IMG/VR virus record: IMGVR_UViG_3300033143_001962
Span: 1 to 64,000 of that record
Direction: 5' to 3' (one strand)
Length of the DNA stretch: 64,000 bases
Part shown: positions 2,578 through 29,743 of the stretch, piece after piece
Layout: every line of letters begins with the position of its first letter
How positions within the stretch are numbered: the first letter of the stretch is position 1
Position numbers and translations under genes: made by a program
The notes under the pieces: model-generated
Told to the model about the DNA's origin: nothing
What the model saw: only the letters and a program-made list of their open reading frames with translations
The model's database searches: none

Positions 2578-2924
2578 CGCACGTTCGGCTGTGGGTGTGG
2601 TAGACGTTCCGGTTGTGCTATCGTGTTGTATATAATTGTTAACCAGTGCTTATCTGAATTCTCAATAACATTACCAGTTTCGTCTAAGTAACCGGGTTGT
2701 ACTTCTTCGGTCATTTTATTAATAACGTCACATGGTACTGCCAGTGTGTCATTACCACTGTTGTAATAATTTATCATTTCCATCACGGTATCGTGATCGT
2801 ACTTGCCTGCGGCTTCTGTTCTAAAACAGTATCCAGCATTTTTTGGATTCCATAATGTAATATACGGGTCTTCTTCTTTAGTGTGCTTTACGCTTACTAT
2901 GTAGTACTTACTTATGTTTTTCAT
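2574..2924 (-). CDS. hypothetical phage protein
   Basis: YYIVSVKHT..DPYITLW.P.NAGY motif; overlaps its neighbours in the operon. Confidence 0.6.
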   Translation of the reverse strand: MKNISKYYIVSVKHTKEEDPYITLWNPKNAGYCFRTEAAGKYDHDTVMEMINYYNSGNDTLAVPCDVINKMTEEVQPGYLDETGNVIENSDKHWLTIIYNTIAQPERLPHPQPNVR

Positions 2925-3156
2925 TTGCTAGGCCTTTTAGTTGTTCAATCAACTCTTTATCAAGTTCTTCTCGGATTCCAATGGCTAATTCTCTTGCCAT
3001 GAAGTCTTGGAATGTTTCTGTTGGCGCTCCATGTTGTAATCTGTGCCATACCTTTTCTTCTTCGGTCATGCCCGCTTCGTCATCAGAAGGCATTATGTCT
3101 GTACCTCTGATATCCCAATTAGCCATTAGTGGGTTAGCTGGTTTTTTATTAGTCAC
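2908..3156 (-). CDS. WxRL-tagged mini-protein with major-capsid backbone-helix fragment
   Basis: EEEKVWHRLQ tag. FMARELAIGIREELDKELIEQLKGLA resembles MCP EIMAALAQEITAEIDQEILLSLRSLA. Confidence 0.65.
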   Translation of the reverse strand: MTNKKPANPLMANWDIRGTDIMPSDDEAGMTEEEKVWHRLQHGAPTETFQDFMARELAIGIREELDKELIEQLKGLANEKHK

Positions 3157-3454
3157 TCATCTTTCCTCTTAATTCGCTTCTGCGTCCTGATATTATAATT
3201 AAATTATTACTTTTTGCAAAGTCCATTAAATGTTTGTACATTCCAGGCGCTTCTTCTTCGAGTCTATCGTCGATACATAATCCTGATGCACTGTGCTCGT
3301 CTACGAAACACGGGTGTACGTACTTGTGATATTGCATACGTTTATTAGCTCCGAATGATGCGGCGGTTCCTGCTAATCGTTTACACCAATCGCTTGGTCT
3401 GAACTTTTTACCTTCTGTAGTTATTCCTACTATTAATTTTGTCGGGTCTGGCAT
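3149..3454 (-). CDS. DUF3579-like protein
   Basis: GITTEGKKFRPSDWCKRL...DDRLEE..P.MY..LMDFAKSNNL matches the proteobacterial DUF3579 pattern as recalled. Confidence 0.7.
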   Translation of the reverse strand: MPDPTKLIVGITTEGKKFRPSDWCKRLAGTAASFGANKRMQYHKYVHPCFVDEHSASGLCIDDRLEEEAPGMYKHLMDFAKSNNLIIISGRRSELRGKMSD

Positions 3455-3474
3455 TTTAATCCTAAATGTTTCTG

Positions 3475-3666
3475 CTATTTAGCCCCGGATAATAACTTCC
3501 AATCTTTTCCATCATACGTCCACATGTCATCCGAACTGTGATCGAAGTAGATGCTGCCGGCTATAGGTTTAGCAAGCGGGTCACTAGTGAATTTTGGACC
3601 AGTGTATTTTAATCTATCCCAGACTTCTTGCTGCTCTTTAGTTAATTGTGGTGTACGTACTGACAT
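3475..3666 (-). CDS. WxRL-tagged mini-protein with tail-fibre repeat unit
   Basis: Likely start MSVRTPQ. Tag EQQEVWDRLK followed by GSIYFDHSSDDMWTYDGKDW. Confidence 0.65.
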   Translation of the reverse strand: MSVRTPQLTKEQQEVWDRLKYTGPKFTSDPLAKPIAGSIYFDHSSDDMWTYDGKDWKLLSGAK

Positions 3667-3946
3667 GCAAGTCTGCTCCGTCAGGTGGAGTTGATTTGAA
3701 CTGTATGGTAGTTGTTGCATTACTTTCAATACTGTAATCAAGTTTATGGCGTAGTTTGCAGCCGTCTTTAAAGACTTCGAATCGCACCTTCTCCAATGTA
3801 AGTGATGGTAATGCAAATACATCGCCCCAACCGTTACCTGTGAAGTGGTTTACACTTATTAGCCGGTCGCTAGCCTGCCTTAGTATATTCCACATTTCCT
3901 TTTTAGACTTAAATGCTTTTGTTATTGTTTTCTTAGGAAGTTTCAT
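3638..3946 (-). CDS. WxxL-tagged mini-protein with virion beta-repeat domain
   Basis: Likely start MKLPKK. Tag KKEMWNILR followed by FTGNG..F...V..DG...DYSI...F..PPDGA. Confidence 0.65.
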   Translation of the reverse strand: MKLPKKTITKAFKSKKEMWNILRQASDRLISVNHFTGNGWGDVFALPSLTLEKVRFEVFKDGCKLRHKLDYSIESNATTTIQFKSTPPDGADLHVSTYTTIN

Positions 3947-4218
3947 TTTAGTCTGCGCCACATTTCCCTTTTGTGATTCTCTTTACGCTCAGCTTTATTT
4001 CTTACATGCACAAAACGTTTATGCTCTACTATCTCATCTAAGTACGGGCAGTTAAACGCAATTTTATCTATGTCATAACTTTGCCCTACTGCTTGACAGG
4101 AGGTAGCAATGTACACACCATCTTGTGATCCGTCAGGCGAGCAGGCATCAATCTCCCACTCAATGTACTCCTGGCATTGTTTATTCCAGCAAAATTCGTT
4201 AAAGACTATGTCAGACAT
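3943..4218 (-). CDS. 4-Cys mini-protein with C-terminal WxRL tag
   Basis: Likely start MSDIV. FNEFCWNKQC...SC...NCPY; ends KREMWRRLK. Confidence 0.65.
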   Translation of the reverse strand: MSDIVFNEFCWNKQCQEYIEWEIDACSPDGSQDGVYIATSCQAVGQSYDIDKIAFNCPYLDEIVEHKRFVHVRNKAERKENHKREMWRRLK

Positions 4219-4522
4219 ATTGTAGTATCCTCCAAATCTTTTCCTTTTTCTTTTGCTTCTGCTCTTCTGCCCATTCCTTTTCAAACAGAAATTTTGCGCG
4301 GGCGTTAGTAACATGCCAATCAACCATACCTTGCAAATGCACACAATTATGCGGGTACGTAGGAATGTTTTCGTCGTTGTCTAAGATCTTAGAGCATGAT
4401 GCATATTCAACAGTGGACACATGAGTTATAAAACCATCTTCCATAATTAATTCTTCGCCGTACTCACTATAGCACTCGCACTCAAAATGATCTCTGCAAA
4501 GTTCGTACCAATTATAACTCAT
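4211..4522 (-). CDS. 4-Cys mini-protein with C-terminal WxxL tag
   Basis: YELCRDHFEC...SC...NCVH; ends KEKIWRILQYV. Confidence 0.65.
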   Translation of the reverse strand: MSYNWYELCRDHFECECYSEYGEELIMEDGFITHVSTVEYASCSKILDNDENIPTYPHNCVHLQGMVDWHVTNARAKFLFEKEWAEEQKQKKKEKIWRILQYV

Positions 4523-4731
4523 TTTAATTTATCCTCAGGGATGGACATTGCATCGTGTATCCTCTGCATGTACTGTTCTCTGAATTTATGCATCGTTGGC
4601 TGCACTGCTGTTTTAATAACATCTATATCTATATCTGCCCATCTATGCCAGCCAGTCTTAGGCTTGTTATCACCTTTAAGCTTATCCCACATTATCCACT
4701 TAGCTGTCTTTGTTTTCTTCGTCTTTTTCAT
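4519..4731 (-). CDS. WxKL-tagged mini-protein
   Basis: Likely start MKKTKK. Contains IMWDKLKGDNKPKTGW, shared with 6000..6311. Confidence 0.6.
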   Translation of the reverse strand: MKKTKKTKTAKWIMWDKLKGDNKPKTGWHRWADIDIDVIKTAVQPTMHKFREQYMQRIHDAMSIPEDKLK

Positions 4732-4969
4732 ATTCTGCTCTGGCTTGTGCAAACTGTTTGTTAGTAATCGGGAGGCCGTGTATCGTCCCGTAAATATCAT
4801 CGTCAGACATTGGCTGTATGCCTACTATATCATTTGCTAATAGTGTTGGCATTACCTTTCTAATCATTGGTATCACTATACTATCAAACCCGGGCTTGTG
4901 TACTTTCTTCAAAGCCCTGAATGTTTTTTGTGCGTCACTTATTGTCTTTTTAGTTAGTTTAAAAGACAT
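4700..4969 (-). CDS. mini-protein carrying the major-capsid Gol-region fragment
   Basis: IVIPMIRKVMPTLLANDIVGIQPMS is 15/25 identical to MCP residues 60-84 in this window. Confidence 0.75.
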   Translation of the reverse strand: MSFKLTKKTISDAQKTFRALKKVHKPGFDSIVIPMIRKVMPTLLANDIVGIQPMSDDDIYGTIHGLPITNKQFAQARAEYEKDEENKDS

Positions 4970-5234
4970 CTATGTACACCGGCATGTTGTTGATCCTTTT
5001 TAAGCTCTTTTCGGGCTCTAATAATTTCTTCCACATCATATCTTTTTTCTTTGCTTCATGCTTTGCTTTCTTAATATCTTCCATGTGTGGGCAATTTTCC
5101 GCTATCTTTAAAATATTAAATGTAATCTTGCTGGTGCCGATGCTGCATGTTATACACCTACCTACTTGCATTTTAATATCAGCGAAGTGCTTACACTCCT
5201 TTGCTCTGCAAAATTCGTTAAAGTTATACGCCAT
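4959..5234 (-). CDS. 4-Cys mini-protein with WxKL tag
   Basis: Likely start MAYNF. FNEFCRAKEC...TC...NCPH, tag KDMMWKKLL, tail INNMPVYIDVF. Confidence 0.65.
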   Translation of the reverse strand: MAYNFNEFCRAKECKHFADIKMQVGRCITCSIGTSKITFNILKIAENCPHMEDIKKAKHEAKKKDMMWKKLLEPEKSLKRINNMPVYIDVF

Positions 5235-5457
5235 TCCTATCATTATACACTTGATTGAGCAATGGTTCTACACCTTTGGATACATCGCGTATAACGCCAG
5301 GGTAGAATGAACTAATATCGTAATCGACTATATGCACACCTGGTTTCATTACGTGTCCTGTCTGTGACAGACGTTTCCACATTGCATCTTGCTCGCGTTT
5401 TAATTGCTTGCGCAAGCCGTTGCGTATTTTACGTTTAGTAATTTCTATTGCATTCAT
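5224..5457 (-). CDS. WxRL-tagged mini-protein with family B DNA polymerase motif A fragment
   Basis: Tag QDAMWKRLS followed by IVDYDISSFYPGVIR (compare PolB DxxSLYPSII). Confidence 0.65.
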   Translation of the reverse strand: MNAIEITKRKIRNGLRKQLKREQDAMWKRLSQTGHVMKPGVHIVDYDISSFYPGVIRDVSKGVEPLLNQVYNDRNGV

Positions 5458-5585
5458 TTATCATCTGGCTCGTTGAATATTATTTTAGCATTTTGGTAAT
5501 CTACCTGAAGCGGTATATACGGGCAATATATATAACCTGCGTTTACCTCTACTTCCACTGGAACGAATTTTAATTTGTCCCACAT
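5454..5585 (-). CDS. 43-aa WxKL-tagged mini-protein with capsid YCPYIPL fragment (not in ORF track)
   Basis: MWDKLKFVPVEVEVNAGYIYCPYIPLQVDYQNAKIIFNEPDDK; AAGGA RBS; ATGA overlap with the next gene. Confidence 0.7.
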   Translation of the reverse strand: MWDKLKFVPVEVEVNAGYIYCPYIPLQVDYQNAKIIFNEPDDK

Positions 5586-5601
5586 TATTTCCTTATCTGT
5601 T

Positions 5602-6003
5602 TTATTCGTGTTGTCCAAACTCTACTCTCTCGGCCATATTTTTCTTAATTTGATTCTGACGGTTCATATTATGAATTGTTCTAGCAAACGATGAGCGACA
5701 TAATACTGTTAAATACGAATACGCATTGCTACTCTTAGTTTCATCGTATCTGTGATAGTACCGTAACATATTAGTAATTGCGTCTTGTATTAAGTCCTCA
5801 GCGTATGTAAACGATTGAAAATTTTTCCTAGTTAATTCTTTCTCTGCTAAATGTACAAGGTACTTTGCTAAGTTGCCAGTCGTTTGTTTAATCAGTTTCG
5901 AGTGACGTATTGCTTCGCGTAACTCTGCGTTGGTTGTGATCTCAACTTGGTTGTACCATGGTGCTTTTAACTTACGCCAAAATAATTTTTGTTCTTTGTT
6001 CAT
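5602..6003 (-). CDS. compact gp55-like (late sigma) paralogue with N-terminal WxKL tag
   Basis: TTGNLAKYL..L.E...R.N...FTY.ED....A......Y DETKSSNAYSY.T....SF.R aligns with 28673..29653. Confidence 0.75.
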   Translation of the reverse strand: MNKEQKLFWRKLKAPWYNQVEITTNAELREAIRHSKLIKQTTGNLAKYLVHLAEKELTRKNFQSFTYAEDLIQDAITNMLRYYHRYDETKSSNAYSYLTVLCRSSFARTIHNMNRQNQIKKNMAERVEFGQHE

Positions 6004-6311
6004 ACAGAAGACGATTCAAAGTCTATTAGAATGGGGCTGTTTTTAGTACGTACTGCCCGGCCAAGACTCTGGAAAGCGATCATACTTTTCCCTACACCAG
6101 ACTGTGCTGTGAATCCATTTATGAAGCTACGGTTAATACCGTGCATGAAGTTTGATGCTTCTGCAAGATTCCGCCAACCTGTTTTCTTAGGTGTATTATC
6201 GCCACTAAGCTTGTTCCATATTTGCGAGGGTGTGCCGTGTATCTTTTCAAACTGCTTACGTTTGCCGTTTGCTATCTTACGTTTATTAATCTGTACTTTA
6301 CTTTCTTTCAT
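6000..6311 (-). CDS. WxKL-tagged mini-protein with RecA/DnaB-type Walker A fragment
   Basis: SQIWNKLS...TGWRNL...GINRSFINGFTAQSGVGKSMI...ILIDFE, then the protein ends. Confidence 0.65.
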   Translation of the reverse strand: MKESKVQINKRKIANGKRKQFEKIHGTPSQIWNKLSGDNTPKKTGWRNLAEASNFMHGINRSFINGFTAQSGVGKSMIAFQSLGRAVRTKNSPILIDFESSSV

Positions 6312-6463
6312 CGTGGTCCTGTATTCTTTGTTGGCTGTTTCATCGACAAAAATATACTAGATAGTAATTTCCATTCTTTCTGTGCTTCGGTGAGTGGAGG
6401 AGTGCTTAACTTCTTCCACATTTCGTGCTGTTCTCTTTCTTCTTTTGTTTTAAATATTTTCAC
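6308..6463 (-). CDS. WxKL-tagged mini-protein
   Basis: Likely GTG start after an AGGA RBS; EREQHEMWKKLS. Confidence 0.55.
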   Translation of the reverse strand: MKIFKTKEEREQHEMWKKLSTPPLTEAQKEWKLLSSIFLSMKQPTKNTGPR

Positions 6464-6743
6464 GGTGCTTCCTGAGTTTTGCTTTTGCTTGTACCCGTGT
6501 ACTAAAATCCGTAGATTCCACATCACGCATCAAATTTGCCAGTGCATCCCTTTCTTGTGCTAATCGTTTTTCTTCTTCGTAGTCAACATCAGCAGACATC
6601 ATTCGTGCTCTAATTCTGACAGACATATCCTGATCTTTACATAATAAATCCAAGTGCTTGCGGGTATGGATTAGCTCAATCTTTTCTTCTTGCGTCAGTG
6701 CTGAAATACGTAGCACATCAAATAAGTCTGTTTCAGTTGTCAT
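6450..6743 (-). CDS. small helical-repeat-like protein, paralogue of 8065..8268
   Basis: DLF..L...ALTQ.EK...I...KHLD....D.D..VR..AR. Confidence 0.6.
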   Translation of the reverse strand: MTTETDLFDVLRISALTQEEKIELIHTRKHLDLLCKDQDMSVRIRARMMSADVDYEEEKRLAQERDALANLMRDVESTDFSTRVQAKAKLRKHRENI

Positions 6744-6900
6744 ATAACGTTTTCTTCTTGCCCATTGTTGCCATTAAGTACGATCTGACTAGATAATTAT
6801 CTTGTACCGCGAAGTTAGGATCAATCCAATATGACTCAACGGCATGCTGAATGCTTCCGTACTTTAATTTTAAAAATGTTACCACTTGTTCAATTTCCAT
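6733..6900 (-). CDS. FLxLKYGS-family mini-protein, 55 aa (not in ORF track)
   Basis: MEIEQVVTFLKLKYGSIQHAVESYW...; directly downstream of a promoter. Confidence 0.65.
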   Translation of the reverse strand: MEIEQVVTFLKLKYGSIQHAVESYWIDPNFAVQDNYLVRSYLMATMGKKKTLYDN

Positions 6901-6949
6901 TTCTAATCGCCAATAGCCGCTTGTTTATGAGGTTGCGCTTTTAAGCTAC

Positions 6950-6979
6950 ATAATAACATTTTATGTTATAAAAAGTCAA
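6950..6979 (-). promoter_or_regulatory. sigma70-type early promoter
   Basis: TTGACT-18 nt-TATTAT with TGn extension. Confidence 0.6.
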
Positions 6980-6986
6980 GTATTTG

Positions 6987-7328
6987 CTAAACATCATTTG
7001 CCAAAATTGCTGTGGCTGATGGCTTTATGCGTTTACGATCGTTGTCGTACTGAGCTGTAGCAATTTCAATACTGCTTAAATGTTTTAATAATGAGTGGAG
7101 TTTTTTATCTTCGTTGCCTAACTTTGACCACATAATGTCTTTGCTGAACAAGGTGCGAATCGCGTTAACGTTTGTTTCAATTCTTTCTAACCTGCCATTG
7201 AACTCGCCTACGTTTCCATTGTGCTGCCGGACCGTGTGTGCGAGCTTAGTTTTCAACCCCGAAATTTCATCGTCTTTGTCACGGAGTTGTTGTTGCAGGT
7301 CTCTAATTAAATTCTTCTTAGCTGTCAT
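6987..7328 (-). CDS. coiled-coil protein with internal WxKL tag
   Basis: Heptad-rich N-half; KDIMWSKLG. Confidence 0.6.
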   Translation of the reverse strand: MTAKKNLIRDLQQQLRDKDDEISGLKTKLAHTVRQHNGNVGEFNGRLERIETNVNAIRTLFSKDIMWSKLGNEDKKLHSLLKHLSSIEIATAQYDNDRKRIKPSATAILANDV

Positions 7329-7380
7329 AAATCACCTAAATGTTATCAATACTACGCTTTCTTACTACGACTACGAGCTA

Positions 7381-7409
7381 AGTATAACATTTTTTGGTGC
7401 AGAAGTCAA
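7381..7409 (-). promoter_or_regulatory. sigma70-type early promoter
   Basis: TTGACT-17-TATACT with TGn extension. Confidence 0.75.
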
Positions 7410-7582
7410 GCTTTTCGCTTATTTAGGTTAATAAAGTTGTAATTATTGTATTGTTCTTTGGAGTACAGTAGGAGTGCTTTGTGTTCGTCGTTGGATAGAT
7501 TGATATCATTGTTGACCCAAAGGTCGAATGCGTTTGTCATGCTGCCGTACTTGAGAATTAGAAAGGTTTTTGCCTGGTCCAT
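7406..7582 (-). CDS. FLxLKYGS-family mini-protein, 58 aa (not in ORF track)
   Basis: MDQAKTFLILKYGSMTNAFDLW... Confidence 0.65.
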   Translation of the reverse strand: MDQAKTFLILKYGSMTNAFDLWVNNDINLSNDEHKALLLYSKEQYNNYNFINLNKRKA

Positions 7583-7634
7583 AGTAAATATTTACCATAG
7601 TACGGCTTTTTACGTGGGGGCGCTTTTGACCCTA

Positions 7635-7663
7635 AGTATAACGTTTTGTTATTTAAAAGTCAA
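7635..7663 (-). promoter_or_regulatory. sigma70-type early promoter
   Basis: TTGACT-17-TATACT. Confidence 0.75.
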
Positions 7664-7869
7664 GTTTTTATTAGCAGTTTGAAGAACATTGCGTCTTGCT
7701 CTTGCTCAAACCAGAAGACTGGGGCGGTGTACTGATATATAAATTTGCCAGTGGTGTGCTTGCTGCACCATGCGGATAGTTCTAATAGATTATTTTTACT
7801 ATGTGTGAATGATACTTTATACCATGTGTTTCTATCAAAGGCATCGTAACATTCTTGATTCTTTTTCAT
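7660..7869 (-). CDS. small hypothetical phage protein (W-C...FWFEQEQDAMFFKL type)
   Basis: Overlaps the upstream gene (ATGA); motif style common in small phage proteins. Confidence 0.6.
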   Translation of the reverse strand: MKKNQECYDAFDRNTWYKVSFTHSKNNLLELSAWCSKHTTGKFIYQYTAPVFWFEQEQDAMFFKLLIKT

Positions 7870-8072
7870 CGGAAGTTATTTATTTTTTTCAGTATATCAA
7901 GCAACTCCGGAATGTCCGGGTGTAAGTCCGGATCAATGCTATCCAGCCAGTGCTTGAACTCTTGGTCGTATTTTTGTATATTGATTTCTTTAATGAGCTC
8001 TAATTTCTGCTCGGTGGTTAAATACTCTTTGGTTAATCTATGCCACAGTTCTTTCTTTTCTTCTTCACTCAC
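7866..8072 (-). CDS. mini-protein with N-terminal WxRL tag
   Basis: MSEEEKKELWHRLT. Confidence 0.6.
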   Translation of the reverse strand: MSEEEKKELWHRLTKEYLTTEQKLELIKEINIQKYDQEFKHWLDSIDPDLHPDIPELLDILKKINNFR

Positions 8073-8268
8073 TTTGCCATCCTAGCGTTTTAAGTTGTTT
8101 GTTTATTCTAACGTACTCTTGTTTATGCTTTTGCTTTCTTGCGTATCTTCTAACTTCACTATCATCATCGTTTTCAAAATAATCTAAGTGCTTGTTACTA
8201 GCAATGCATAACATCTTTTCGTACTGAGTGAGGGCGTTTAATTTTATAATTGTGAATAAATCTTCCAT
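8065..8268 (-). CDS. paralogue of 6450..6743
   Basis: Likely start MEDLF; ALTQYEK...KHLDYFENDDDSEVRRYAR. Confidence 0.6.
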   Translation of the reverse strand: MEDLFTIIKLNALTQYEKMLCIASNKHLDYFENDDDSEVRRYARKQKHKQEYVRINKQLKTLGWQSE

Positions 8269-8373
8269 AGCTATGTCTGTGTTTTTGCGCTTGGGCAACT
8301 CACTTCGTGCCTTGCGTTCTCTCTGTAAGTTACAGTCGAACCTACTCACCAAGCTCCTTGCTTTCGCAGACTA

Positions 8374-8403
8374 AGCATAACATATTTTAGAGGCAAAAGT
8401 CAA
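8374..8403 (-). promoter_or_regulatory. sigma70-type early promoter
   Basis: TTGACT-18-TATGCT with TGn extension. Confidence 0.6.
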
Positions 8404-8418
8404 CCGAGGTTTGCCAAA

Positions 8419-8859
8419 CTAAACGTTGTCGTTTTCATGTAGGCGTGTGTATAATGATAGTGCTAAATCAAATTGCATAATATGTGACATTATCCAGGGA
8501 CGGATTATCGATACTAAGTAGTATCCCATAACTTTTGGATTATGCGATAACTGTGATGTGTCAGCAACTTGATGACGTATATCATTGTGTGATTCTTTGT
8601 GACAATCGGCTGCTAATTTAGGAAATCCAATTCTATGCATTAGTGCTTCTTCGTGTTCTAAATGTGTGTCAACGTAGTCAACTAGCTCATCGTAGTACTG
8701 CTGAATGTGCTCTATTGTTGGGTCATCGTGTGTAATTTCGTTAATAATATTATTGCATAATTTAAACAGATTTCGGTGTTCGTTATCTATTTGTAAGTCG
8801 CCTGTTTCAAGGTCAGGTTGCCATTCTAACGGCGTTAGATTATCGGATTGTGGGGTCAT
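8419..8859 (-). CDS. bacteriohemerythrin
   Basis: W...LETGDLQIDNEH..LF, HLEHEEALM, HKESH, WIMSHIMQFD: complete hemerythrin di-iron ligand set (H, HxxxE, HxxxH, HxxxxD). Confidence 0.9.
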   Translation of the reverse strand: MTPQSDNLTPLEWQPDLETGDLQIDNEHRNLFKLCNNIINEITHDDPTIEHIQQYYDELVDYVDTHLEHEEALMHRIGFPKLAADCHKESHNDIRHQVADTSQLSHNPKVMGYYLVSIIRPWIMSHIMQFDLALSLYTRLHENDNV

Positions 8860-8891
8860 TGTATAGTCCTATTTTAAGTTAGCTATTAGTA

Positions 8892-8920
8892 ATTGTAGCA
8901 CGGAATCGCACCAAAGTCTA
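8892..8920 (-). promoter_or_regulatory. sigma70-type promoter for hemerythrin
   Basis: TAGACT-17-TACAAT with TGn; a GATAAATA late-type box also lies at 8930..8937. Confidence 0.55.
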
Positions 8921-8942
8921 GTAGTTTTTTATTTATCGTGTT

Positions 8943-9089
8943 TCATTTTAATGCAAAAAATTCGTTAAGCATATTGAATTCTGCTACTGGCATTTTAGCG
9001 ACTGCTGACCAATTCATCATCATATCATATGCTTTTTGTTGTGATCCGTACTTAATAACAATGAATGATTTTATTTCTTCAGTACTCAT
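8943..9089 (-). CDS. FLxLKYGS-family mini-protein
   Basis: Likely start MSTEEIKSFIVIKYGSQQKAYD. Confidence 0.6.
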   Translation of the reverse strand: MSTEEIKSFIVIKYGSQQKAYDMMMNWSAVAKMPVAEFNMLNEFFALK

Positions 9090-9261
9090 AAGTGTACGCT
9101 CCTGTTCGGCGATTATTGTCTTTTGCCCATTGTGCAATCAGATCTGATTCTTCTTGTGTAAATGAGGTATCATCAAATTTATACATCCATTCTTCATAAG
9201 CAAGTATCATACTACCGTACTTTAGTACAAGAATTAGTTCAGTGTCTTTACCCGTTTTCAT
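9079..9261 (-). CDS. FLxLKYGS-family mini-protein
   Basis: ELILVLKYGSMILAYEEW. Confidence 0.65.
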   Translation of the reverse strand: MKTGKDTELILVLKYGSMILAYEEWMYKFDDTSFTQEESDLIAQWAKDNNRRTGAYTYEY

Positions 9262-9403
9262 CTGACCACCATTCCATAAATTCAGTTAGCATTGCGTCGA
9301 GATCTGTACCTAAATCGTCACCTGTAAAATTACAATACACCATTACAATGTCATCATTGGACCCGTAACGTAATCTTAAATATGTTAGTACCGCTGGATT
9401 CAT
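9248..9403 (-). CDS. FLxLKYGS-family mini-protein, 51 aa (not in ORF track)
   Basis: MNPAVLTYLRLRYGSNDDIVMVY...; ATGA overlap with 9400..9618. Confidence 0.6.
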   Translation of the reverse strand: MNPAVLTYLRLRYGSNDDIVMVYCNFTGDDLGTDLDAMLTEFMEWWSDENG

Positions 9404-9618
9404 GCTTTTAACTTTGCCCACATGTACAATCTATTAATTTCTTCGTCAAACTCAGGTGTGCGTATCGTGTACCCTTTGCCGTTAATTCTATACTGGTAAT
9501 TATCAAAATCGTAAGTCTTAGGTGCAGAGACTCTGTAGTGTCTGACCCAGAACAATGTGCCATTTAAGCATTCGTATACTACATCACGTTGGTGCATTAT
9601 AACCGAGACACTATTCAT
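9400..9618 (-). CDS. RINGxxY-family mini-protein with C-terminal WxKL tag
   Basis: YRINGKGY...EFDEEINRLYMWAKLKA. Confidence 0.6.
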   Translation of the reverse strand: MNSVSVIMHQRDVVYECLNGTLFWVRHYRVSAPKTYDFDNYQYRINGKGYTIRTPEFDEEINRLYMWAKLKA

Positions 9619-9940
9619 CTTTCTTCTCCGGGACGTGGTCTACTACTAATCTAAGTTCATGCATTGTTAAACGTGTGTACATACCAGGTGGTAGATTTAT
9701 CCAGTAATGATATGCATTAAACACTGACCCGTACTTCCAAATTAGTACCATCTCGGCGTTATCTTTAGTAACATCCAATGTCTCCAGGCAGCCCTGTTCG
9801 CACCATAAATTTAATAGTGGTGGTACATTTTCAACTGTTCTGACTCCTGGCATGTTAACTGCTACTTCAAACGCTGTGATCACTTCTCCGATTGAAGAGT
9901 ACTTAAGTGACAGGAATACTTGCTGTTCATCTTCAGTCAC
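9611..9940 (-). CDS. tandem two-domain FLxLKYGS-family protein
   Basis: VFLSLKYSS and MVLIWKYGSVFNAY. Confidence 0.65.
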   Translation of the reverse strand: MTEDEQQVFLSLKYSSIGEVITAFEVAVNMPGVRTVENVPPLLNLWCEQGCLETLDVTKDNAEMVLIWKYGSVFNAYHYWINLPPGMYTRLTMHELRLVVDHVPEKKDE

Positions 9941-10124
9941 TTAGCTTCTCCCACACACGTTCTTTCTTACGTTCTTCATAAAATGCTTTTCTGTACTCAA
10001 GTGTATTTTCACTGTACAGTACATCGTTAATACGAAGTGTAACCCAGCTTTGTGAAATTGCACTTTGTCGTAGCGTACTGCATACTTGCGCAAATTTACC
10101 ACTGCTTAATTCAATTTCAATCAC
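9933..10124 (-). CDS. RINGxxY-family mini-protein with C-terminal WxKL tag
   Basis: LRINDVLY...KERVWEKLSD. Confidence 0.6.
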   Translation of the reverse strand: MIEIELSSGKFAQVCSTLRQSAISQSWVTLRINDVLYSENTLEYRKAFYEERKKERVWEKLSD

Positions 10125-10311
10125 TTAGCTTCTGCCATATCTCTGCTTTTTCAATAAATTCTGTTGCTGCTCGTCTAAATGCGTACGAATCTTTTTTGTA
10201 AATAACACCTTTAATTCTGAACGTGTGCCACGCAAAATTAGGATTCTTTAAACGTGGCACATTAGCCTTCACCCAATACCCGCAGTACTTTTCTCTATAA
10301 TGTGCTTTCAT
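10117..10311 (-). CDS. RINGxxY-family mini-protein with C-terminal WxKL tag
   Basis: FRIKGVIY...KAEIWQKLSD. Confidence 0.6.
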   Translation of the reverse strand: MKAHYREKYCGYWVKANVPRLKNPNFAWHTFRIKGVIYKKDSYAFRRAATEFIEKAEIWQKLSD

Positions 10312-10320
10312 ACCCGCCTA

Positions 10321-10497
10321 CTAATAGTTGTGCTCTTGCTGAACAAATCGATAATACCAATCTAACATCTCGTGTCGTTGTACTGTAGTAAACAAATCAT
10401 AATCGCTTCGTAAGTCGCCGTCACGCATTGCGTCGTAAGCGTTAGCCATGCTCCCGTACTTTAATATTAAGAATGTTCTAGTCTTTTCAGGACTCAT
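10321..10497 (-). CDS. FLxLKYGS-family mini-protein, 58 aa (not in ORF track)
   Basis: MSPEKTRTFLILKYGSMANAYDAM... Confidence 0.65.
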   Translation of the reverse strand: MSPEKTRTFLILKYGSMANAYDAMRDGDLRSDYDLFTTVQRHEMLDWYYRFVQQEHNY

Positions 10498-10696
10498 TGT
10501 ACAATTCCTTTATGAAGAAGTCAAGCATCAATTCTTCTTGTTGATTAACATTCATTAAATGGTATGCTATCTGGTCTCCGAATTCAAGCGAGTCATGAAA
10601 CGCATCAGCTAACTGTTCTAAGCCGCCGTGTTTAAGTGCTAAGAATGTGTATTCCTCGGTTGTTATAAAATCATCAAGTTCAACGGTTTCAGTCAT
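10487..10696 (-). CDS. FLxLKYGS-family mini-protein
   Basis: YTFLALKHGGLEQLADAF. Confidence 0.6.
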   Translation of the reverse strand: MTETVELDDFITTEEYTFLALKHGGLEQLADAFHDSLEFGDQIAYHLMNVNQQEELMLDFFIKELYNES

Positions 10697-10697
10697 T

Positions 10698-10886
10698 TTA
10701 ATCCCACATGTACCTGCGTCTGTTCAATTCACTGTCAGTTGCGTAGTAAAAGTAATTGTTCATTATTGTGTAGTCATCCGGCACTTGCTTTCCAACAACG
10801 GTACTAGTATTCATAAAGACTTGATAGGCTTTGTACACCGTACCGTACTTTAAAATTAAATAAGATTTAGTTGCTGCGTAGTTCAT
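10698..10886 (-). CDS. FLxLKYGS-family mini-protein
   Basis: KSYLILKYGTVYKAYQVF. Confidence 0.65.
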   Translation of the reverse strand: MNYAATKSYLILKYGTVYKAYQVFMNTSTVVGKQVPDDYTIMNNYFYYATDSELNRRRYMWD

Positions 10887-11086
10887 AATATGATCTTCTG
10901 TACACGTTCAGGAATTATTAAATCACCTTGTTCCTTTTTAGATTTAATATGCGATTGAATAAAGCTTAGTAATTTGTAGTAGTCTGGATCACTGTCGAGT
11001 CCTAGTGATCGCAATGCACTGTACCTAGAAAAGATATGTGCTACGCTTCCATATTTAAGCATAAGGAATGTGTCTTCAGAATTCAT
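10883..11086 (-). CDS. FLxLKYGS-family mini-protein
   Basis: DTFLMLKYGSVAHIF. Confidence 0.65.
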   Translation of the reverse strand: MNSEDTFLMLKYGSVAHIFSRYSALRSLGLDSDPDYYKLLSFIQSHIKSKKEQGDLIIPERVQKIIL

Positions 11087-11277
11087 TAAATTAAATCCAT
11101 TGCATATTCCATTGCAGATTTAGTTCTTATCGCAAGATGGTGTGCCCAAGCATACCCTACTATCATGCATTGTTCATCTTCTGTAAAATCAGCATCCCAA
11201 TCATCAGATATGTTATAAGCATCAATGGCATTTTCCATGCTACCGTACTTTAATATTAAGAATGTTTTAATTGGCAT
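11086..11277 (-). CDS. FLxLKYGS-family mini-protein
   Basis: KTFLILKYGSMENAIDAY. Confidence 0.65.
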   Translation of the reverse strand: MPIKTFLILKYGSMENAIDAYNISDDWDADFTEDEQCMIVGYAWAHHLAIRTKSAMEYAMDLI

Positions 11278-11516
11278 TATGATTTACCGTACACTGTGGT
11301 AATTGTAGGGGCAAATACCCCATTCAATGCTGCCCAAGCTTCTAATGGTTTTACTACTTCATCGAACTCATCGGATGGTTTTTCATATATAAACCCATTT
11401 ATTTTAAAGTCAAACCTCTTAAAATTGTACTGGCGATCAGCCATTATTGTTGACTCTCTCCATACGCTGTCAAAGATTTCTCTATTTTTTGAGTACAAAA
11501 TGTCCTGATTAGCCAT
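11277..11516 (-). CDS. RINGxxY-family mini-protein
   Basis: Likely start MANQD, downstream of the promoter; FKINGFIY...EFDEVVKPLEAWAALN. Confidence 0.6.
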   Translation of the reverse strand: MANQDILYSKNREIFDSVWRESTIMADRQYNFKRFDFKINGFIYEKPSDEFDEVVKPLEAWAALNGVFAPTITTVYGKS

Positions 11517-11546: not shown

Positions 11547-11575
11547 AGTGTAACAGGTTATTTTGGGAAAGTCAA
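11547..11575 (-). promoter_or_regulatory. sigma70-type early promoter heading the mini-gene array
   Basis: TTGACT-17-TACACT with TGn extension. Confidence 0.7.
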
Positions 11576-12094: not shown

Positions 12095-12123
12095 AAAAAA
12101 AAGCACTCCGAAGAGTGCTTTTT
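12095..12123 (-). terminator. intrinsic terminator after major capsid gene (likely bidirectional)
   Basis: Minus strand AAAAAGCACTC-TTCG-GAGTGCTTTTTTTT with a UUCG tetraloop. Confidence 0.9.
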
Positions 12124-12146: not shown

Positions 12147-13337
12147 TTAGCTGAAAGACAAGTTGCTTACGCTGATTTCGCCTAAGTAATCACCAGCATT
12201 ACCAAAAGATGATGCAGTGTTAGTGAGTTCCACGTAACCATAACGTGTCATGAAGCTTACAACTGGTTCGAACGTAGACGGATCTAAAACAACGCCTGAG
12301 CTCATTAAAGGAATGTAAGGGCAGTAGAACGCTGGAGCGTCTGCTTCACTTGAACCTTTATAACCAATAAGTACCGGAGTACTATCAGCAGCATATGAAT
12401 CAACATATACTTTCATAGCACTGTTTAATGTACCAACTAACTTAGTGTTAGTAGGAGCTTCAAAAGTACCTTCAGTTGTACGTGCAAATGCAGATGTAGT
12501 AGCTGATTGTAATACTGTTAATGCAGCTGGACTAACAACGGCATAGTTACCTGCGCCACGACGTGTACGTTGTGCGATAAGGTTAGCAGTACGGTTAACT
12601 AATACAGCAAGTGCCGCATGTTCATCACCTACGAATGTAGCAGTACCAGATACAGCAGCTTGATCGTAGTTGAATTCAGTTGACGCTAAAGAACGTAAAG
12701 ATAATAAAATCTCTTGATCGATTTCAGCGGTAATTTCTTGTGCTAATGCAGCCATGATTTCAGCTTCGACATCAATGCCGTGCATTGATTGTGCATCTTG
12801 AGCAGCTTCAAAAGTCCAACGCGCTTGTAACTTACGTGTCTTCGCTTCAACAGCTTGCTTTAAGATTTGAACGGAAATGTTACGACCGCCTTCACCTTCC
12901 ATTTGCGCTGTAGCAGCACCACGGTAGTCAGTCTGTGTAGCACCAACGCCTGCAGAGTATGCTTGAGCAATTTTGAAAGGACTTAACGCTTCATCACCAG
13001 CTGTAGTTGGTGTACCAGCAGCAGATGTATCGTTCATTGTTGAACCGTAACGTACACGTAAAGTATGGATCTGGCTTACTGGACCAGACATTGGTTGAAC
13101 ACCTACTAATTCGTTTGCAATTACCGTAGGCATTACACGTCGAATTACTGGTAAAATTACACGGTTTAATGTTGCAACGTTACCAGCGGCAGTAGCGCCA
13201 CTTGTAGCAGATTCTGCTAAGTGGTTACGAGTGTTTTCTAGGATTACGCCCATTGTAGAACGTTTAGTACCGTCTAGACCTTCAAGCAATGCTTCTTTAG
13301 TCTCTCCCCAACGGCCTTCTAATAGTGCTTGTGACAT
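12147..13337 (-). CDS. gp23: major capsid protein (T4 gp23-like)
   Basis: RRVMPTVIANELVGVQPMSGP, KTRKLQARWTFEAAQD..HGID.EAE, FYCPYIPL, FMTRYG. Confidence 0.95.
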   Translation of the reverse strand: MSQALLEGRWGETKEALLEGLDGTKRSTMGVILENTRNHLAESATSGATAAGNVATLNRVILPVIRRVMPTVIANELVGVQPMSGPVSQIHTLRVRYGSTMNDTSAAGTPTTAGDEALSPFKIAQAYSAGVGATQTDYRGAATAQMEGEGGRNISVQILKQAVEAKTRKLQARWTFEAAQDAQSMHGIDVEAEIMAALAQEITAEIDQEILLSLRSLASTEFNYDQAAVSGTATFVGDEHAALAVLVNRTANLIAQRTRRGAGNYAVVSPAALTVLQSATTSAFARTTEGTFEAPTNTKLVGTLNSAMKVYVDSYAADSTPVLIGYKGSSEADAPAFYCPYIPLMSSGVVLDPSTFEPVVSFMTRYGYVELTNTASSFGNAGDYLGEISVSNLSFS

Positions 13338-27797: not shown

Positions 27798-28686
27798 GAA
27801 GCTCCTTTGGGTATGTATATGTCCATAATTCTGTTGTTGTTTTGGGAAAGTCGTCACCAATGTCATTACATCTTAATTCGAGATTTAATTCTTCTCTAAG
27901 ATATTTTTGTATGTATGCTTCGTCGTATACGGTACTGTCGTCTGGCATGTTGCAATTAATGTGTTTAGTAAAGTTATCTAAGAACAGTGCTATATCTTTG
28001 TCCTTATTAAGGTGCTTTTGTAAGCTTAACATTTCATTGTGATTTGTCATTATAGTGTCGTAACTTTCGGTTACGTCGAAGTTAAGTTCACGCGCTAACC
28101 GCATTAATGTATTTTTAAAATCAAATAATAAATCTTTGATGTTGATTTCAATACACTTGTCCTTGCTATTATATTCGCCAACTGAATTTACGCCTTTGAT
28201 AAATTCTTTATAACTGTAAAATTCTCGCATGTTTGCAACTTTTGAAAAATCCTCATCATTGATTTCTTTTCTATGCTGGTCTATTAGATATCTGTCATGA
28301 ACTTTATCGTGCTTGTTGTTGCGAATTAATAAATGCATGTCTGCGTCGGATCTAATTAATATACCTTTGACAACTTTTGATAAAATGTAATCAACACTTT
28401 CACCAGCACTCGAATCGGTTAAGTCACGCTCGTCATTAAATACATGATGCATTCGGAAAAACGGAAGTGTGTCTGGCCCGTGTACATGTTGCTCGAACGT
28501 AGGCATGTTAATCCTTGAGTTATATATTGTGAAATTTTTCTGCGTGTGAGAATTGCCATTCTTTCCCCACGGCAATTCCGGACTATCACAAAGCCCAATG
28601 CTGGTAAAATTGTTAAGTACCCAATAAAGATACGACCCGTATGCTCCAGGCTCGTATATTATAGGTATTGTTTTACTTTTTGTCAA
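27790..28686 (-). CDS. hypothetical protein, possible sulfotransferase-like P-loop fold
   Basis: N-terminal IIYEPGAYGSYL loop. Confidence 0.35.
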   Translation of the reverse strand: MTKSKTIPIIYEPGAYGSYLYWVLNNFTSIGLCDSPELPWGKNGNSHTQKNFTIYNSRINMPTFEQHVHGPDTLPFFRMHHVFNDERDLTDSSAGESVDYILSKVVKGILIRSDADMHLLIRNNKHDKVHDRYLIDQHRKEINDEDFSKVANMREFYSYKEFIKGVNSVGEYNSKDKCIEINIKDLLFDFKNTLMRLARELNFDVTESYDTIMTNHNEMLSLQKHLNKDKDIALFLDNFTKHINCNMPDDSTVYDEAYIQKYLREELNLELRCNDIGDDFPKTTTELWTYTYPKELHE

Positions 28687-29653: not shown

Positions 29654-29681
29654 ACATCTCCTTGTAGCTTTAGATTTAACT

Positions 29682-29709
29682 ATTATAGCACATAAGCATA
29701 ATAAGTCAA
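29682..29709 (-). promoter_or_regulatory. sigma70-type promoter for gp55-47-46 operon
   Basis: TTGACT-16-TATAAT with TGn extension. Confidence 0.7.
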
Positions 29710-29743
29710 CCATAATTTATTATATTGGGTTATAATATGTACT

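What the first reader, a model, noticed from the sequence alone, without database searches (positions are those of the whole stretch)
2908..11516. Portable W-x-K/R-L helical tag on at least 17 otherwise unrelated mini-proteins
Instances: KVWHRLQ, EVWDRLK, EMWNILR, EMWRRLK, KIWRILQ, IMWDKLK, MMWKKLL, AMWKRLS, MWDKLK, LFWRKLK, QIWNKLS, EMWKKLS, IMWSKLG, ELWHRLT, YMWAKLK, RVWEKLS, EIWQKLS. Variants are TFRALK and AWAALN. It is usually preceded by an E/K-rich helix. It sits at the N-terminus, in the middle, or at the extreme C-terminus of different domain families. This behaves like a short linear docking, localisation or degradation-adaptor motif for one common partner (inference).
Basis: partly seen in the sequence, partly recalled or inferred. 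Interest (0 to 1): 0.8.

Follow-up and report, generated by a model that had tools for sequence, protein, structure and literature searches.

The report
Shared helix-end tag on phage mini-proteins
A 10-15-residue helix end (charged run, then hydrophobic-Trp-x-Lys/Arg-Leu) really recurs on about 18 tiny early proteins of an uncultured jumbo phage. It is the conserved C-terminus of a large unnamed family of ~65-residue phage proteins and has also been joined to other mini-genes, several of them pieces of the phage's own capsid, tail and late-sigma genes; what it binds is unknown.

Summary
All 17 listed instances and both variants are in frame on the minus strand. W-x-[KR]-L occurs 15 times in 36 array proteins, against 0.6 expected from shuffling and 2 in 68 other small proteins of the same contig. 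Codons differ between copies, so it is a protein motif. "Otherwise unrelated" is overstated: the carriers fall into about 9-10 families.

The tag is the last 10-15 residues of the C-terminal helix of a previously unnamed ~65-residue family ("family B"). That family has 194 metagenomic clusters; where context could be fetched, its genes lie in tandem arrays just after the T4-type major capsid gene. Its fold is confidently predicted, and W and L are its most conserved residues.

In this phage the same helix end also sits on unrelated mini-ORFs. One transfer is recent (32 of 35 bases identical). One orthologue pair differs only by having or lacking the tag.

Several carriers are fragments of the phage's own late proteins: capsid protein, tail sheath, tail fibre and late sigma. 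The array is driven by sigma-70-like early promoters.

A common-partner docking role is the best reading, but it is inferred and the partner is unknown. The main rival is a structural remnant of family-B gene ends.

The parts
2908..3156 (-). G35: tag VWHRLQ (W-x-R-L at 3037-3048), followed by a capsid-protein-like piece
   Evidence: MCP profile positions 187-222; the score beats 500 of 500 shuffles.
3475..3666 (-). G33: N-terminal tag EVWDRLK (3610-3621), followed by a tail-fibre-like piece
   Evidence: Matches residues 96-132 of ORF 52847-54340 (E 0.007, shuffle p<=0.03). Its tag DNA is 32 of 35 identical to that of p109 at contig 71.3 kb.
3638..3946 (-). G32: N-terminal variant tag EMWNILR (3881-3892)
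   Evidence: Family-B profile positions 52-64.
3943..4218 (-). G31: Cys-rich family D with a C-terminal tag EMWRRLK-stop (3949-3960). Its stop overlaps the G32 start.
   Evidence: Weak MCP-like FNCPY piece (shuffle p<=0.004).
4211..4522 (-). G30: C-terminal variant tag KIWRILQYV-stop (4223-4234)
4519..4731 (-). G29: N-terminal tag IMWDKLK (4678-4689); family E
   Evidence: Marginal MCP-like piece (p<=0.044).
4700..4969 (-). G28: degenerate tag TFRALK (4907-4918), followed by a fragment of the capsid protein N-terminal conserved block
   Evidence: Pfam Gp23 1.2e-8. 60% identity over 25 aa to the phage's own MCP. z = 13 against shuffles.
4959..5234 (-). G27: family D, with tag MMWKKLL (5022-5033) near the C-terminus
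5224..5457 (-). G26: family E, basic N-terminus followed by tag AMWKRLS (5368-5379)
5454..5618 (-). G25: N-terminal tag IMWDKLK (5571-5582), followed by the capsid-protein piece YCPYIPL
   Evidence: Beats 500 of 500 shuffles against the MCP profile.
5602..6003 (-). G24: N-terminal tag LFWRKLK (5968-5979), followed by a truncated copy of the late sigma factor core
   Evidence: phrog_234 8e-22. Matches residues 232-317 of the full-length late sigma ORF 28673-29713 (E 5.6e-12, z = 16.8).
6000..6311 (-). G23: family E, with tag QIWNKLS (6207-6218)
6308..6463 (-). G22: tag EMWKKLS (6407-6418). The start codon is uncertain (GTG 6463 or ATG 6421).
6987..7328 (-). G19: tag IMWSKLG (7119-7130) in the middle of a 113-aa protein
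7866..8072 (-). G16: N-terminal tag ELWHRLT (8034-8045)
   Evidence: A homologue with the tag is in L170.
9400..9618 (-). G10: family B, with C-terminal tag YMWAKLKA-stop (9409-9420)
9933..10124 (-). G8: family B, with C-terminal tag RVWEKLSD-stop (9942-9953)
10117..10311 (-). G7: family B, with C-terminal tag EIWQKLSD-stop (10126-10137). This is the protein modelled by AlphaFold2.
11277..11516 (-). G1: family B, with variant AWAALN (11325-11336) followed by a 14-residue extension
10698..10886 (-). G4: a KYGS-family protein ending in a truncated tag, RRRYMWD-stop
6950..6979 (-). Sigma-70-like early promoter TTGACTT-N-TGTTATTAT. The next 17 tightly packed genes, which include the tag-dense block, have no further promoter of this kind.
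7381..7409 (-). early promoter TTGACTT-N17-TGTTATACT
7635..7663 (-). early promoter TTGACTT-N17-CGTTATACT
8374..8403 (-). early promoter TTGACTT-N18-TATGCT
11547..11575 (-). early promoter in front of the first array gene
12098..12123 (-). Strong terminator hairpin after the capsid gene. Its T-run leads into a TTGACT box, giving a PeSL-like terminator/promoter unit.
   Evidence: The same layout is in L003, L169 and L170.
12147..13337 (-). Major capsid protein (T4 gp23 type), the source of the capsid-like fragments
28673..29713 (-). Full-length late sigma factor, the parent of the G24 fragment
   Evidence: phrog_12791 5.4e-72
52847..54340 (+). Tail-fibre-like protein, the parent of the G33 fragment

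Best explanation
The window is the first 64 kb of a 250-kb contig of an uncultured jumbo phage with a T4-type head and tail core. Positions 2.5-11.5 kb hold a hyperplastic early-gene array. It lies behind the capsid-gene terminator and is driven by sigma-70-like promoters. The 'tag' is the last 10-15 residues of the C-terminal helix of a widespread, unnamed family of ~65-residue early proteins (family B). That helix end reads: a K/E-rich stretch, a hydrophobic residue (mostly Met), Trp, x, Lys/Arg, Leu, one or two polar residues, then the helix ends. Recombination inside the array has repeatedly moved this helix end as a coding module onto the N- or C-terminus of other mini-ORFs. Many of those ORFs are partial copies of the phage's own late genes: capsid protein, tail sheath, tail fibre and late sigma. 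Selection keeps W and L in these chimeras. Those steps are shown. The next step is inferred. Without the family-B body, the hydrophobic Met/Trp/Leu face at the tip of a highly charged helix is exposed. I propose it acts as a common handle, through which many different small early proteins contact one shared partner. That partner could be a host hub, a protease or adaptor, or another array protein such as the KYGS three-helix family or the family-B body. Its identity and the outcome of binding are not known.
For: Real protein-level enrichment. Family B: 194 cluster representatives at E<=0.001. Of the 138 small ones listed, 132 have W..L near the C-terminus. W is invariant, and it lies 6 residues from the end in 73 of 133. 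AlphaFold2 gives pLDDT 94.8, and the tag forms the last turns of helix 43-63. The family-B profile aligns to every tagged non-B protein only at positions ~50-64 of 65, and to no untagged protein in that way. Portability: the G33 and p109 tags are 32 of 35 nt identical while the rest of the genes is unrelated. The G17 family occurs with and without the tag. Tagged proteins also occur 60-100 kb away (p109, t77, t81). Selection: W and L are the only invariant columns in family E and in the N-terminal-tag alignment. The motif is also kept in the nearest relative, L003. Early expression signals: a conserved TTGACTT..TGTTATACT promoter in every intergenic gap. There is no TATAAATA late promoter in the array, although it sits in front of structural genes. 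A terminator follows the capsid gene. Cargo made of late-gene fragments.
Against: No partner was identified and no binding was tested. In family B the W/L face lies on the same stripe as the other hydrophobic helix positions (F45, A48/49, F52, A56, W59, L62 in G7). The helix end is predicted with high confidence. Chimeras could have inherited the motif from already diverged family-B paralogues, which would mimic conservation. Only two non-B families have enough members to show purifying selection. The array is lineage-restricted. The closest cultured relative (Vibrio phage 2.275.O) and about 155 of the roughly 160 related capsid loci fetched lack it. A universal host hub is therefore not required.
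Confidence: 0.45

Rival explanations
1. Structural remnant. The motif matters only inside family B, as core residues of its C-terminal helix. The 'tags' on other ORFs are leftovers of decayed family-B genes whose 3' ends became fused to neighbouring ORFs in a fast-recombining array. There is no common partner.
For: The tag equals family-B profile positions 50-64. The hydrophobic periodicity of the B helix runs through W and L, and pLDDT is high to the end. B genes lie in tandem with overlapping stop/start junctions, which makes fusions easy. Array content turns over fast between relatives.
Against: W and L stay invariant while flanking residues diverge within non-B families E and G16/G22, and between this phage and L003/L170. 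Thirteen of 14 consecutive genes carry it. Tagged proteins also occur far from any B gene (p109, t77). An exposed Met-Trp-x-x-Leu tip on a charged helix is costly unless it is used.
Confidence: 0.28
2. Degradation signal. The helix end is a degron or protease-adaptor site that gives all these early proteins a short, synchronised lifetime.
For: It lies at or near a terminus in 17 of 18 copies, on early-expressed proteins. Cargo that mimics late proteins would plausibly need to be removed before assembly starts.
Against: It does not resemble the known bacterial degrons that I recall (the ssrA LAA end, ClpX N-motifs); this is from memory and was not tested. In family B it is part of a well-folded helix. 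One copy is internal (G19).
Confidence: 0.08
3. Membrane-targeting amphipathic helix, like the MinD or FtsA terminal helices, bringing the mini-proteins to the inner membrane.
For: Terminal position, Trp next to Lys/Arg, and amphipathic character (mean hydrophobic moment 0.36). The MinD and FtsA helices as I recall them give similar numbers in the same calculation.
Against: The hydrophobic face has only three residues. There are on average 2.2 acidic residues in the 13-residue segment, and net charge reaches -1 in 5 of 18 copies. D or E occupies the x position in 6 of 18.
Confidence: 0.06
4. Nucleotide-level signal. The conserved codons are really a Shine-Dalgarno or coupling element for the next gene, a nested mini-ORF, or a DNA repeat, and the amino-acid pattern is a by-product.
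For: In C-terminal copies the W codon lies 18 nt before a stop that overlaps the next start (ATGA or GTGATTGA). TGGGAG looks SD-like, and ATG precedes TGG in 10 of 17 copies.
Against: Only 6 of 22 C-terminal copies have TGGGAG. An SD would allow R or G instead of W and says nothing about Leu. Most copies are N-terminal or internal, with no start codon downstream. No consistent SD lies 5-10 nt before the ATG at -1. Synonymous codons vary freely (median 17 of 33 nt identity).
Confidence: 0.03
5. Chance recurrence in K/E/L-rich small proteins.
For: The proteins are rich in K, E and L.
Against: 15 observed against 0.58 expected, with a maximum of 5 in 20,000 shuffles. Fisher tests against the rest of the contig give 1e-6 to 6e-12.
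Confidence: 0.005

Closest known systems
Capsid targeting sequence of T4 internal proteins (IPI-III, Alt, gp67/68); from my own knowledge
   Same: A roughly 10-residue peptide shared by otherwise unrelated phage proteins. It is transferable and directs them to one common destination.
   Different: The CTS is strictly N-terminal, sits on late proteins, is removed by the prohead protease at L/I-x-E, and has no W-x-K-L. Here the element lies at either end or inside, on genes behind early promoters, and no such cleavage site follows it.
Hub-docking terminal motifs: sliding-clamp tails of T4 gp43/gp33/gp55 and the bacterial QL[SD]LF motif; from my own knowledge
   Same: A short motif at protein termini lets many different proteins share one hub. 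One carrier here (G24) is a gp55-type sigma fragment.
   Different: The sequence is unrelated. G24 carries the tag at the N-terminus and matches only positions 26-126 of the 181-position late-sigma profile (phrog_234), so it lacks the profile's C-terminal part. No clamp link was found.
PeSL promoter/terminator cassettes that shuffle small early ORFs in T4-type hyperplastic regions (PMC4122927, PMC2839356)
   Same: The same genomic setting: a hyperplastic block of tiny early ORFs between core genes, with terminator-plus-early-promoter units (12123-12068 and the intergenic promoters) and rapid turnover between relatives.
   Different: PeSLs are non-coding recombination points. Here the shared module is a coding 10-15-residue helix end kept by selection on the protein.
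T4 Srh and Srd, small early proteins resembling segments of host sigma factors; from my own knowledge
   Same: Early mini-proteins that look like a piece of a larger protein. G24 is a sigma fragment.
   Different: Here the fragments copy the phage's own late proteins (capsid, sheath, fibre, late sigma) and share a common added helix end.
Helical W-x-x-L docking motifs such as p53 F-x-x-x-W-x-x-L binding MDM2; eukaryotic short linear motifs; from my own knowledge
   Same: A short amphipathic helix whose Trp and Leu, three residues apart, form the contact face, and which occurs in different proteins.
   Different: There is no relation by descent. Here the copies share ancestry (module transfer from family B) rather than arising convergently, and in family B the motif is part of a folded domain.
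Membrane-targeting terminal helices of MinD and FtsA; from my own knowledge
   Same: A terminal amphipathic helix with an aromatic residue next to K/R-L.
   Different: The hydrophobic face is smaller and the segment holds many acidic residues.

Membership tests
Family B (new, defined here by the profile of alignment A2) | About 60-70 residues with the pattern MIE..W....F.(Y/F)RI.G.VY....EF..A..K...W.KL.., matched end to end by the profile | tested here: met
   G1, G7, G8 and G10 match with E 6e-16 to 7e-21 over profile positions 1-65. There are 194 representatives in the 1.84-billion-protein library.
Family B | Full domain present in the other tagged proteins | tested here: not met
   G16, G19, G22-G27, G29-G33, G35, p109 and L003E match only profile positions ~50-64. 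They carry the helix end, not the domain.
Short linear motif in the strict sense | 3-10 key residues, functional on their own, in different proteins | tested here: inconclusive
   Length and recurrence are met. Autonomy of function cannot be tested here.
Short linear motif in the strict sense | Lies in an intrinsically disordered or flexible region | tested here: not met
   In family B it is the end of a helix with pLDDT about 88-94. In the other carriers it ends a predicted charged helix.
Short linear motif in the strict sense | Binds a defined globular partner | not testable with these tools
   No complex prediction or interaction data were available.
T4-type capsid targeting sequence | Extreme N-terminus, late expression, followed by an L/I-x-E prohead-protease site | tested here: not met
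   Positions vary. The array has sigma-70-like promoters and no TATAAATA.
Beta-clamp / gp45-binding motif | QL[SD]LF-like or LDFL-like terminal peptide | tested here: not met
   The tag sequences contain no such pattern.
Membrane-targeting amphipathic helix | A continuous hydrophobic face of four or more residues, flanked by basic and few acidic residues | tested here: inconclusive
   Three hydrophobic positions (-1, 0, +3) and a mean of 2.2 acidic residues per 13.
PeSL cassette | Stem-loop terminator directly followed by an early promoter between small ORFs | tested here: met
   Met at the capsid-gene/array border (12123-12068) and in L003, L169 and L170. The other intergenic gaps show the promoter, but no terminator hairpin was found there by the scan.
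Pfam / PHROG / NCBIfam / PADLOC families | A significant profile match for the tag carriers as whole proteins | tested here: not met
   No match for families B, D, E or KYGS. Only the cargo parts match: Gp23, late sigma and Phage_sheath_1C.

The most novel reading that the evidence does not exclude
The array is a natural library of 'bait plus handle' proteins. Early in infection the phage makes small mimics of conserved parts of its own late proteins (capsid protein, tail sheath, tail fibre, late sigma), alongside the variable family-B bodies. Each is joined to one common helix-end handle that recruits a shared effector or sink. This would let the phage intercept whatever binds those late proteins, for example host immune sensors that recognise capsid or tail proteins. 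Alternatively it could hold back premature assembly or late transcription.
Probability: 0.1. Interest if true: 0.9.

Novelty: new variant of a known kind. Interest (0 to 1): 0.66.

Why it matters
Small early phage proteins are the main pool of host-takeover and counter-defence functions, and almost all of them are unannotated. This case offers a handle on about 20 of them at once. One conserved helix end defines a large unnamed family (194 clusters) and marks a set of chimeric mini-proteins. If one partner reads this tag, a single pull-down would place a whole array of orphan genes in one pathway. The finding that many carriers are fragments of the phage's own capsid, tail and late-sigma genes, expressed from early promoters, has no precedent that I know of. 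It raises a testable question: are these fragments decoys or regulators, or just recombination debris?

Tried and rejected
- DNA repeat or shared DNA motif: rejected, because codons vary.
- Shine-Dalgarno dual coding and a nested mini-ORF starting at the ATG before TGG: rejected (no consistent SD).
- My by-eye readings were not supported. G23 as a capsid piece or Walker A protein gave MCP profile p = 0.52 and divDNAB E = 0.14. G26 as a DNA-polymerase motif A fragment had no Pfam or PHROG hit and MCP p = 0.09. I dropped both.
- The word-indexed protein search found only the query itself for G23 and G24.
- Alignment A1 could not be used for a locus scan. A scan with G24 found only the window's own contig.
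- The closest cultured relative (Vibrio phage 2.275.O) and the roughly 160 related capsid loci from IMG/VR and JGI show no tag array, apart from L003. L083 (capsid protein 87% identical) has quite different genes after the capsid gene.
- tblastn of a family-B member against 50,697 cultured phage records: no match.
- ESM Atlas gave no usable lead for G10.
- Foldseek of the family-B model against PDB and BFVD, and of the KYGS model against PDB, found nothing at E < 0.3.
- NCBIfam and PADLOC: nothing credible.
- No public sequencing run was listed for the array, so no read evidence for expression could be obtained.
- Literature searches for a phage W-x-K-L motif or for capsid-fragment mini-proteins found nothing relevant.
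- The hydrophobic-moment calculation did not separate the tag from known membrane helices.
- One contig-walk look-up failed because the gene starts with TTG.

Full report
**What the window is.** The 396-residue ORF at 12147-13337 (-) is a T4 gp23-type major capsid protein. Its best cultured match is 68% identical (Vibrio phage 2.275.O, 349 kb), followed by the PA5oct, Serratia BF and Yersinia fHe-Yen9-04 group. Around it lie a prohead protease, scaffold, portal, baseplate wedge and hub, a late sigma factor and a 4342-residue protein. The window is the first 64 kb of a 249,797-base metagenomic contig, IMGVR_UViG_3300033143_001962 = Ga0366829_1000005. I walked the contig out to 109 kb to obtain a background.

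**The array.** Between 2574 and 11516 the minus strand carries about 36 tightly packed genes of 48-146 codons, many with overlapping stop and start codons. I call them G1 (11277-11516) to G36 (2574-2924).
- A strong terminator hairpin follows the capsid gene (12123-12098).
- Every intergenic gap of the array holds the same sigma-70-like promoter, cTTGACTT-N17-TGTTATACT. This pattern occurs nowhere on the plus strand of the window.
- The T4-type late promoter TATAAATA is found only in front of structural genes.
- Relatives show the same order: capsid gene, terminator, promoter, array.

This is the architecture of a T4-type hyperplastic region with PeSL-like cassettes (PMC4122927). The array is therefore most likely an early transcription unit. 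That rests on sequence signals only, because no sequencing run was listed.

**Checking the observation.** All 17 listed strings and both variants are present in frame.
- Strict W-x-[KR]-L occurs 15 times in the 36 proteins, always with M/I/V/L/F at -1. Shuffling expects 0.58, with a maximum of 5 in 20,000.
- Outside the array, 135 ORF products of the first 109 kb hold 5 hits. Only 2 of 68 other small proteins carry it, against 15 of 36 in the array (Fisher 1e-6). Counted per Trp, it is 15 of 62 against 5 of 511 (6e-12).
- Codons for x, K/R and L differ freely. Median identity over 33 bases around the motif is 17. So this is a protein motif and not a DNA repeat.
- The segment at -12..-2 is 51% charged, against 28% background. 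The motif always closes a helix: 5 copies lie within 4 residues of the C-terminus, and 11 of the other 13 are followed by G or P within six residues.
- The claim "otherwise unrelated" does not hold. BLAST groups the carriers into about 9-10 families: B (G1, G7, G8, G10), a Cys-rich family D (G27, G31, perhaps G30), E (G23, G26, G29), G16/G22, G33/G35, and singletons G19, G24, G25 and G32.

**What the tag is.** A profile of family B (four window proteins plus two from the nearest relative, L003) found 194 cluster representatives at E <= 0.001 among 1.84 billion proteins.
- 138 of the 150 listed are 46-101 residues long, and 132 of them have W..L near the C-terminus. W is the only invariant column of the 61-sequence alignment A2, and L is nearly invariant. 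W lies exactly six residues from the end in 73 of 133.
- The consensus of the end is (F/L)(E/N)K(E/A)(R/K)(M/I/V)W(E/D)K L(K/N/S)(D/G)-stop.
- None occurs in 50,697 cultured phage records.
- Where context could be fetched, the genes lie in tandem arrays of up to eight, directly after the Gp23 gene (L167, L169, L170).
- AlphaFold2 on a 61-sequence alignment gives a confident small fold (pLDDT 94.8): strands 3-7, 13-15, 29-33 and 36-38, a short helix 18-22, and a long C-terminal helix 43-63 whose last turns are the tag. The fold has no match in PDB or BFVD.
- The same profile, run against all array proteins, aligns to every tagged non-B protein only at its last 10-15 positions (about 50-64 of 65). 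It does not align to untagged proteins in that way.

So the tag is the family-B helix end, present without the rest of the domain.

**Portability and selection.**
- G33 (window 3475-3666) and a 109-residue protein 68 kb away (p109, contig 71312-71641) share 32 of 35 bases across the tag, while everything after it differs. This is a recent module transfer.
- G17 (7660-7869, untagged) has a homologue in L170 (E 3e-9). The homologue continues past the shared end with ...RDRMIIWDRLTA-stop.
- Two more tagged small proteins lie in other small-gene arrays at 100.7 and 105 kb. A third array at 86-90 kb has none.
- In family E, and in the alignment of N-terminally tagged proteins, W and L are the only invariant columns apart from the start Met and one Lys.
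- The nearest relative, L003 (capsid protein 89% identical), keeps the motif in families B and E.
- The lineage range is narrow. Vibrio phage 2.275.O and the other roughly 155 related capsid loci lack both family B and the tag.

**What the tag is attached to.** This was not part of the original finding. Many carriers are pieces of the phage's own late proteins.
- G24 is a truncated copy of the late sigma factor (phrog_234 8e-22). It matches residues 232-317 of the full-length gene 28673-29713 (E 5.6e-12, z = 16.8 against shuffles).
- G28 holds the most conserved N-terminal block of the capsid protein (Pfam Gp23 1.2e-8; 60% identity over 25 residues to the phage's own capsid protein).
- G25, G35 and the L003 protein at 4525-4878 match capsid profile positions 332-347, 187-222 and 166-229. 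Each beats 500 of 500 shuffles. G31 (p <= 0.004) and G29 (p <= 0.044) are weaker.
- G33 matches the N-terminal part of the tail-fibre-like protein 52847-54340 (E 0.007; shuffle p <= 0.03).
- p109 is the tag plus the C-terminal domain of a T4 gp18-type tail sheath (residues 564-642 of gp18, E 8e-4 against PDB sequences; Pfam Phage_sheath_1C 6.9e-5, just under the curated cut-off).
- In every case the tag lies outside the region that aligns with the parent protein.

**How it most likely works.** The following are shown:
- The motif is real and selection-maintained.
- It is the terminal segment of the family-B helix.
- It moves as a module.
- It sits at helix ends near protein termini.
- The genes have early-type promoters.

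The following is inferred. Detached from the B body, a Met/Trp/Leu face at the tip of a highly charged helix would be exposed, so the simplest reason to keep it is contact with something shared. That could be a host hub, a protease or adaptor, or another array product. Candidates in the array are the 12 KYGS domains (a three-helix model, pLDDT 75) and the B body itself. I put about 0.45 on this reading.

The main rival (about 0.28) is that W and L are simply core residues of family B. Their spacing continues the hydrophobic stripe of the helix, and the helix end is confidently modelled. On that view the tags elsewhere are remnants of B-gene 3' ends fused to neighbours. Membrane targeting, a pure degron and nucleotide-level explanations are less likely, for the reasons given under the rivals.

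**Comparison with known systems and novelty.** In logic the element resembles the T4 capsid targeting sequence, clamp-binding tails and eukaryotic W-x-x-L helical motifs. The setting resembles PeSL-shuffled hyperplastic regions. It fails the defining features of each of these where they could be tested (see the membership table). No Pfam, PHROG, NCBIfam or PADLOC model covers families B, D, E or KYGS. I rate it a new variant of a known kind, namely a shared portable peptide module on phage proteins. It comes with an unnamed widespread family, and with the unexplained observation that early mini-proteins carry tagged fragments of late structural proteins and the late sigma factor.

Noticed in passing
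window 6733-6900, 7406-7582, 8943-9403, 9611-9940, 10321-11277 (minus strand); also L003 3586-4200 and L170 4337-4709: A second paralogous family ('KYGS': ..TFLILKYGSM.NAY..), with 12 domain copies in the array, interleaved with family B and untagged except for a truncated YMWD-stop on G4. AlphaFold2 predicts three helices (pLDDT 75). It has no fold or profile match. It is a possible receptor for the tag, but this was not tested.
   Followed up: partly
window 2908-6003, and contig 71312-71641 (L163:19227-19556): Early-promoter mini-ORFs that are fragments of the phage's own late proteins: capsid protein (G28, G25, G35, weaker G31 and G29), late sigma (G24), tail fibre (G33) and tail sheath C-domain (p109). 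The G28 piece covers the most conserved N-terminal block of the capsid protein. From memory, this corresponds to the region of T4 gp23 that holds the Gol peptide.
   Followed up: yes
window 6450-6743 + 6308-6463, and 8065-8268 + 7866-8072: A duplicated two-gene cassette. A family-C protein (G21, G15; E 3e-10) is each time followed, with overlapping stop and start, by an N-terminally tagged protein (G22, G16). This is what would be expected if a longer protein had been split just before the tag.
   Followed up: partly
L008:10836, L023:14034, L058:17650, L076:13842: Tail-fibre-like proteins of related jumbo phages start with MAISDxQKVDYLWKKLGY. This holds the same hydrophobic-W-K-K-L-G string at the N-terminus. 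Their C-terminal part matches the window's fibre gene 52847-54340, whose own N-terminus lacks the string.
   Followed up: partly
window 9400-10311 and L167, L169, L170: Family-B genes end ..S/N-D-stop, and the stop overlaps the next gene's start, GTGATTGA or ATGATTGA. As a result the common N-terminus MIE of the next gene and the C-terminal residues of the previous one are encoded by the same bases.
   Followed up: yes
hits P0008, P0011, P0012, P0014 and others: The middle of the family-B profile (positions ~24-59) also matches the repeated ~70-residue units (YKVDGEVY...GYTFSGW) of large bacterial surface proteins. They look like Listeria-Bacteroides-type repeats. Whether this is homology or composition was not resolved.
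   Followed up: no
window 3149-3454 and 8419-8859: Two array genes have known domains: DUF3579 (1.4e-25), which is the only untagged gene inside the tag-dense block, and a hemerythrin HHE cation-binding domain (5e-13).
   Followed up: no
contig 64-72 kb (L163:10656-18180): A cluster of four radical-SAM/SPASM proteins lies next to the tagged sheath-fragment gene p109. Further on there are thymidylate synthase and DHFR, a carbamoyltransferase, and a PAS-GGDEF protein at about 100 kb (L172:8318-9103).
   Followed up: no
window 30899-33034, C-terminal part: A 711-residue ORF with no PHROG match carries a run of GNGS repeats (GSGNGSGNGS...) near its C-terminus.
   Followed up: no
window 28686 and 29709 (minus strand): The same early-promoter pattern (TTGAC.-N17-TATAAT) that drives the array also lies at the start of the late sigma factor gene (29709), and again at 28686, near that gene's 3' end.
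   Followed up: no
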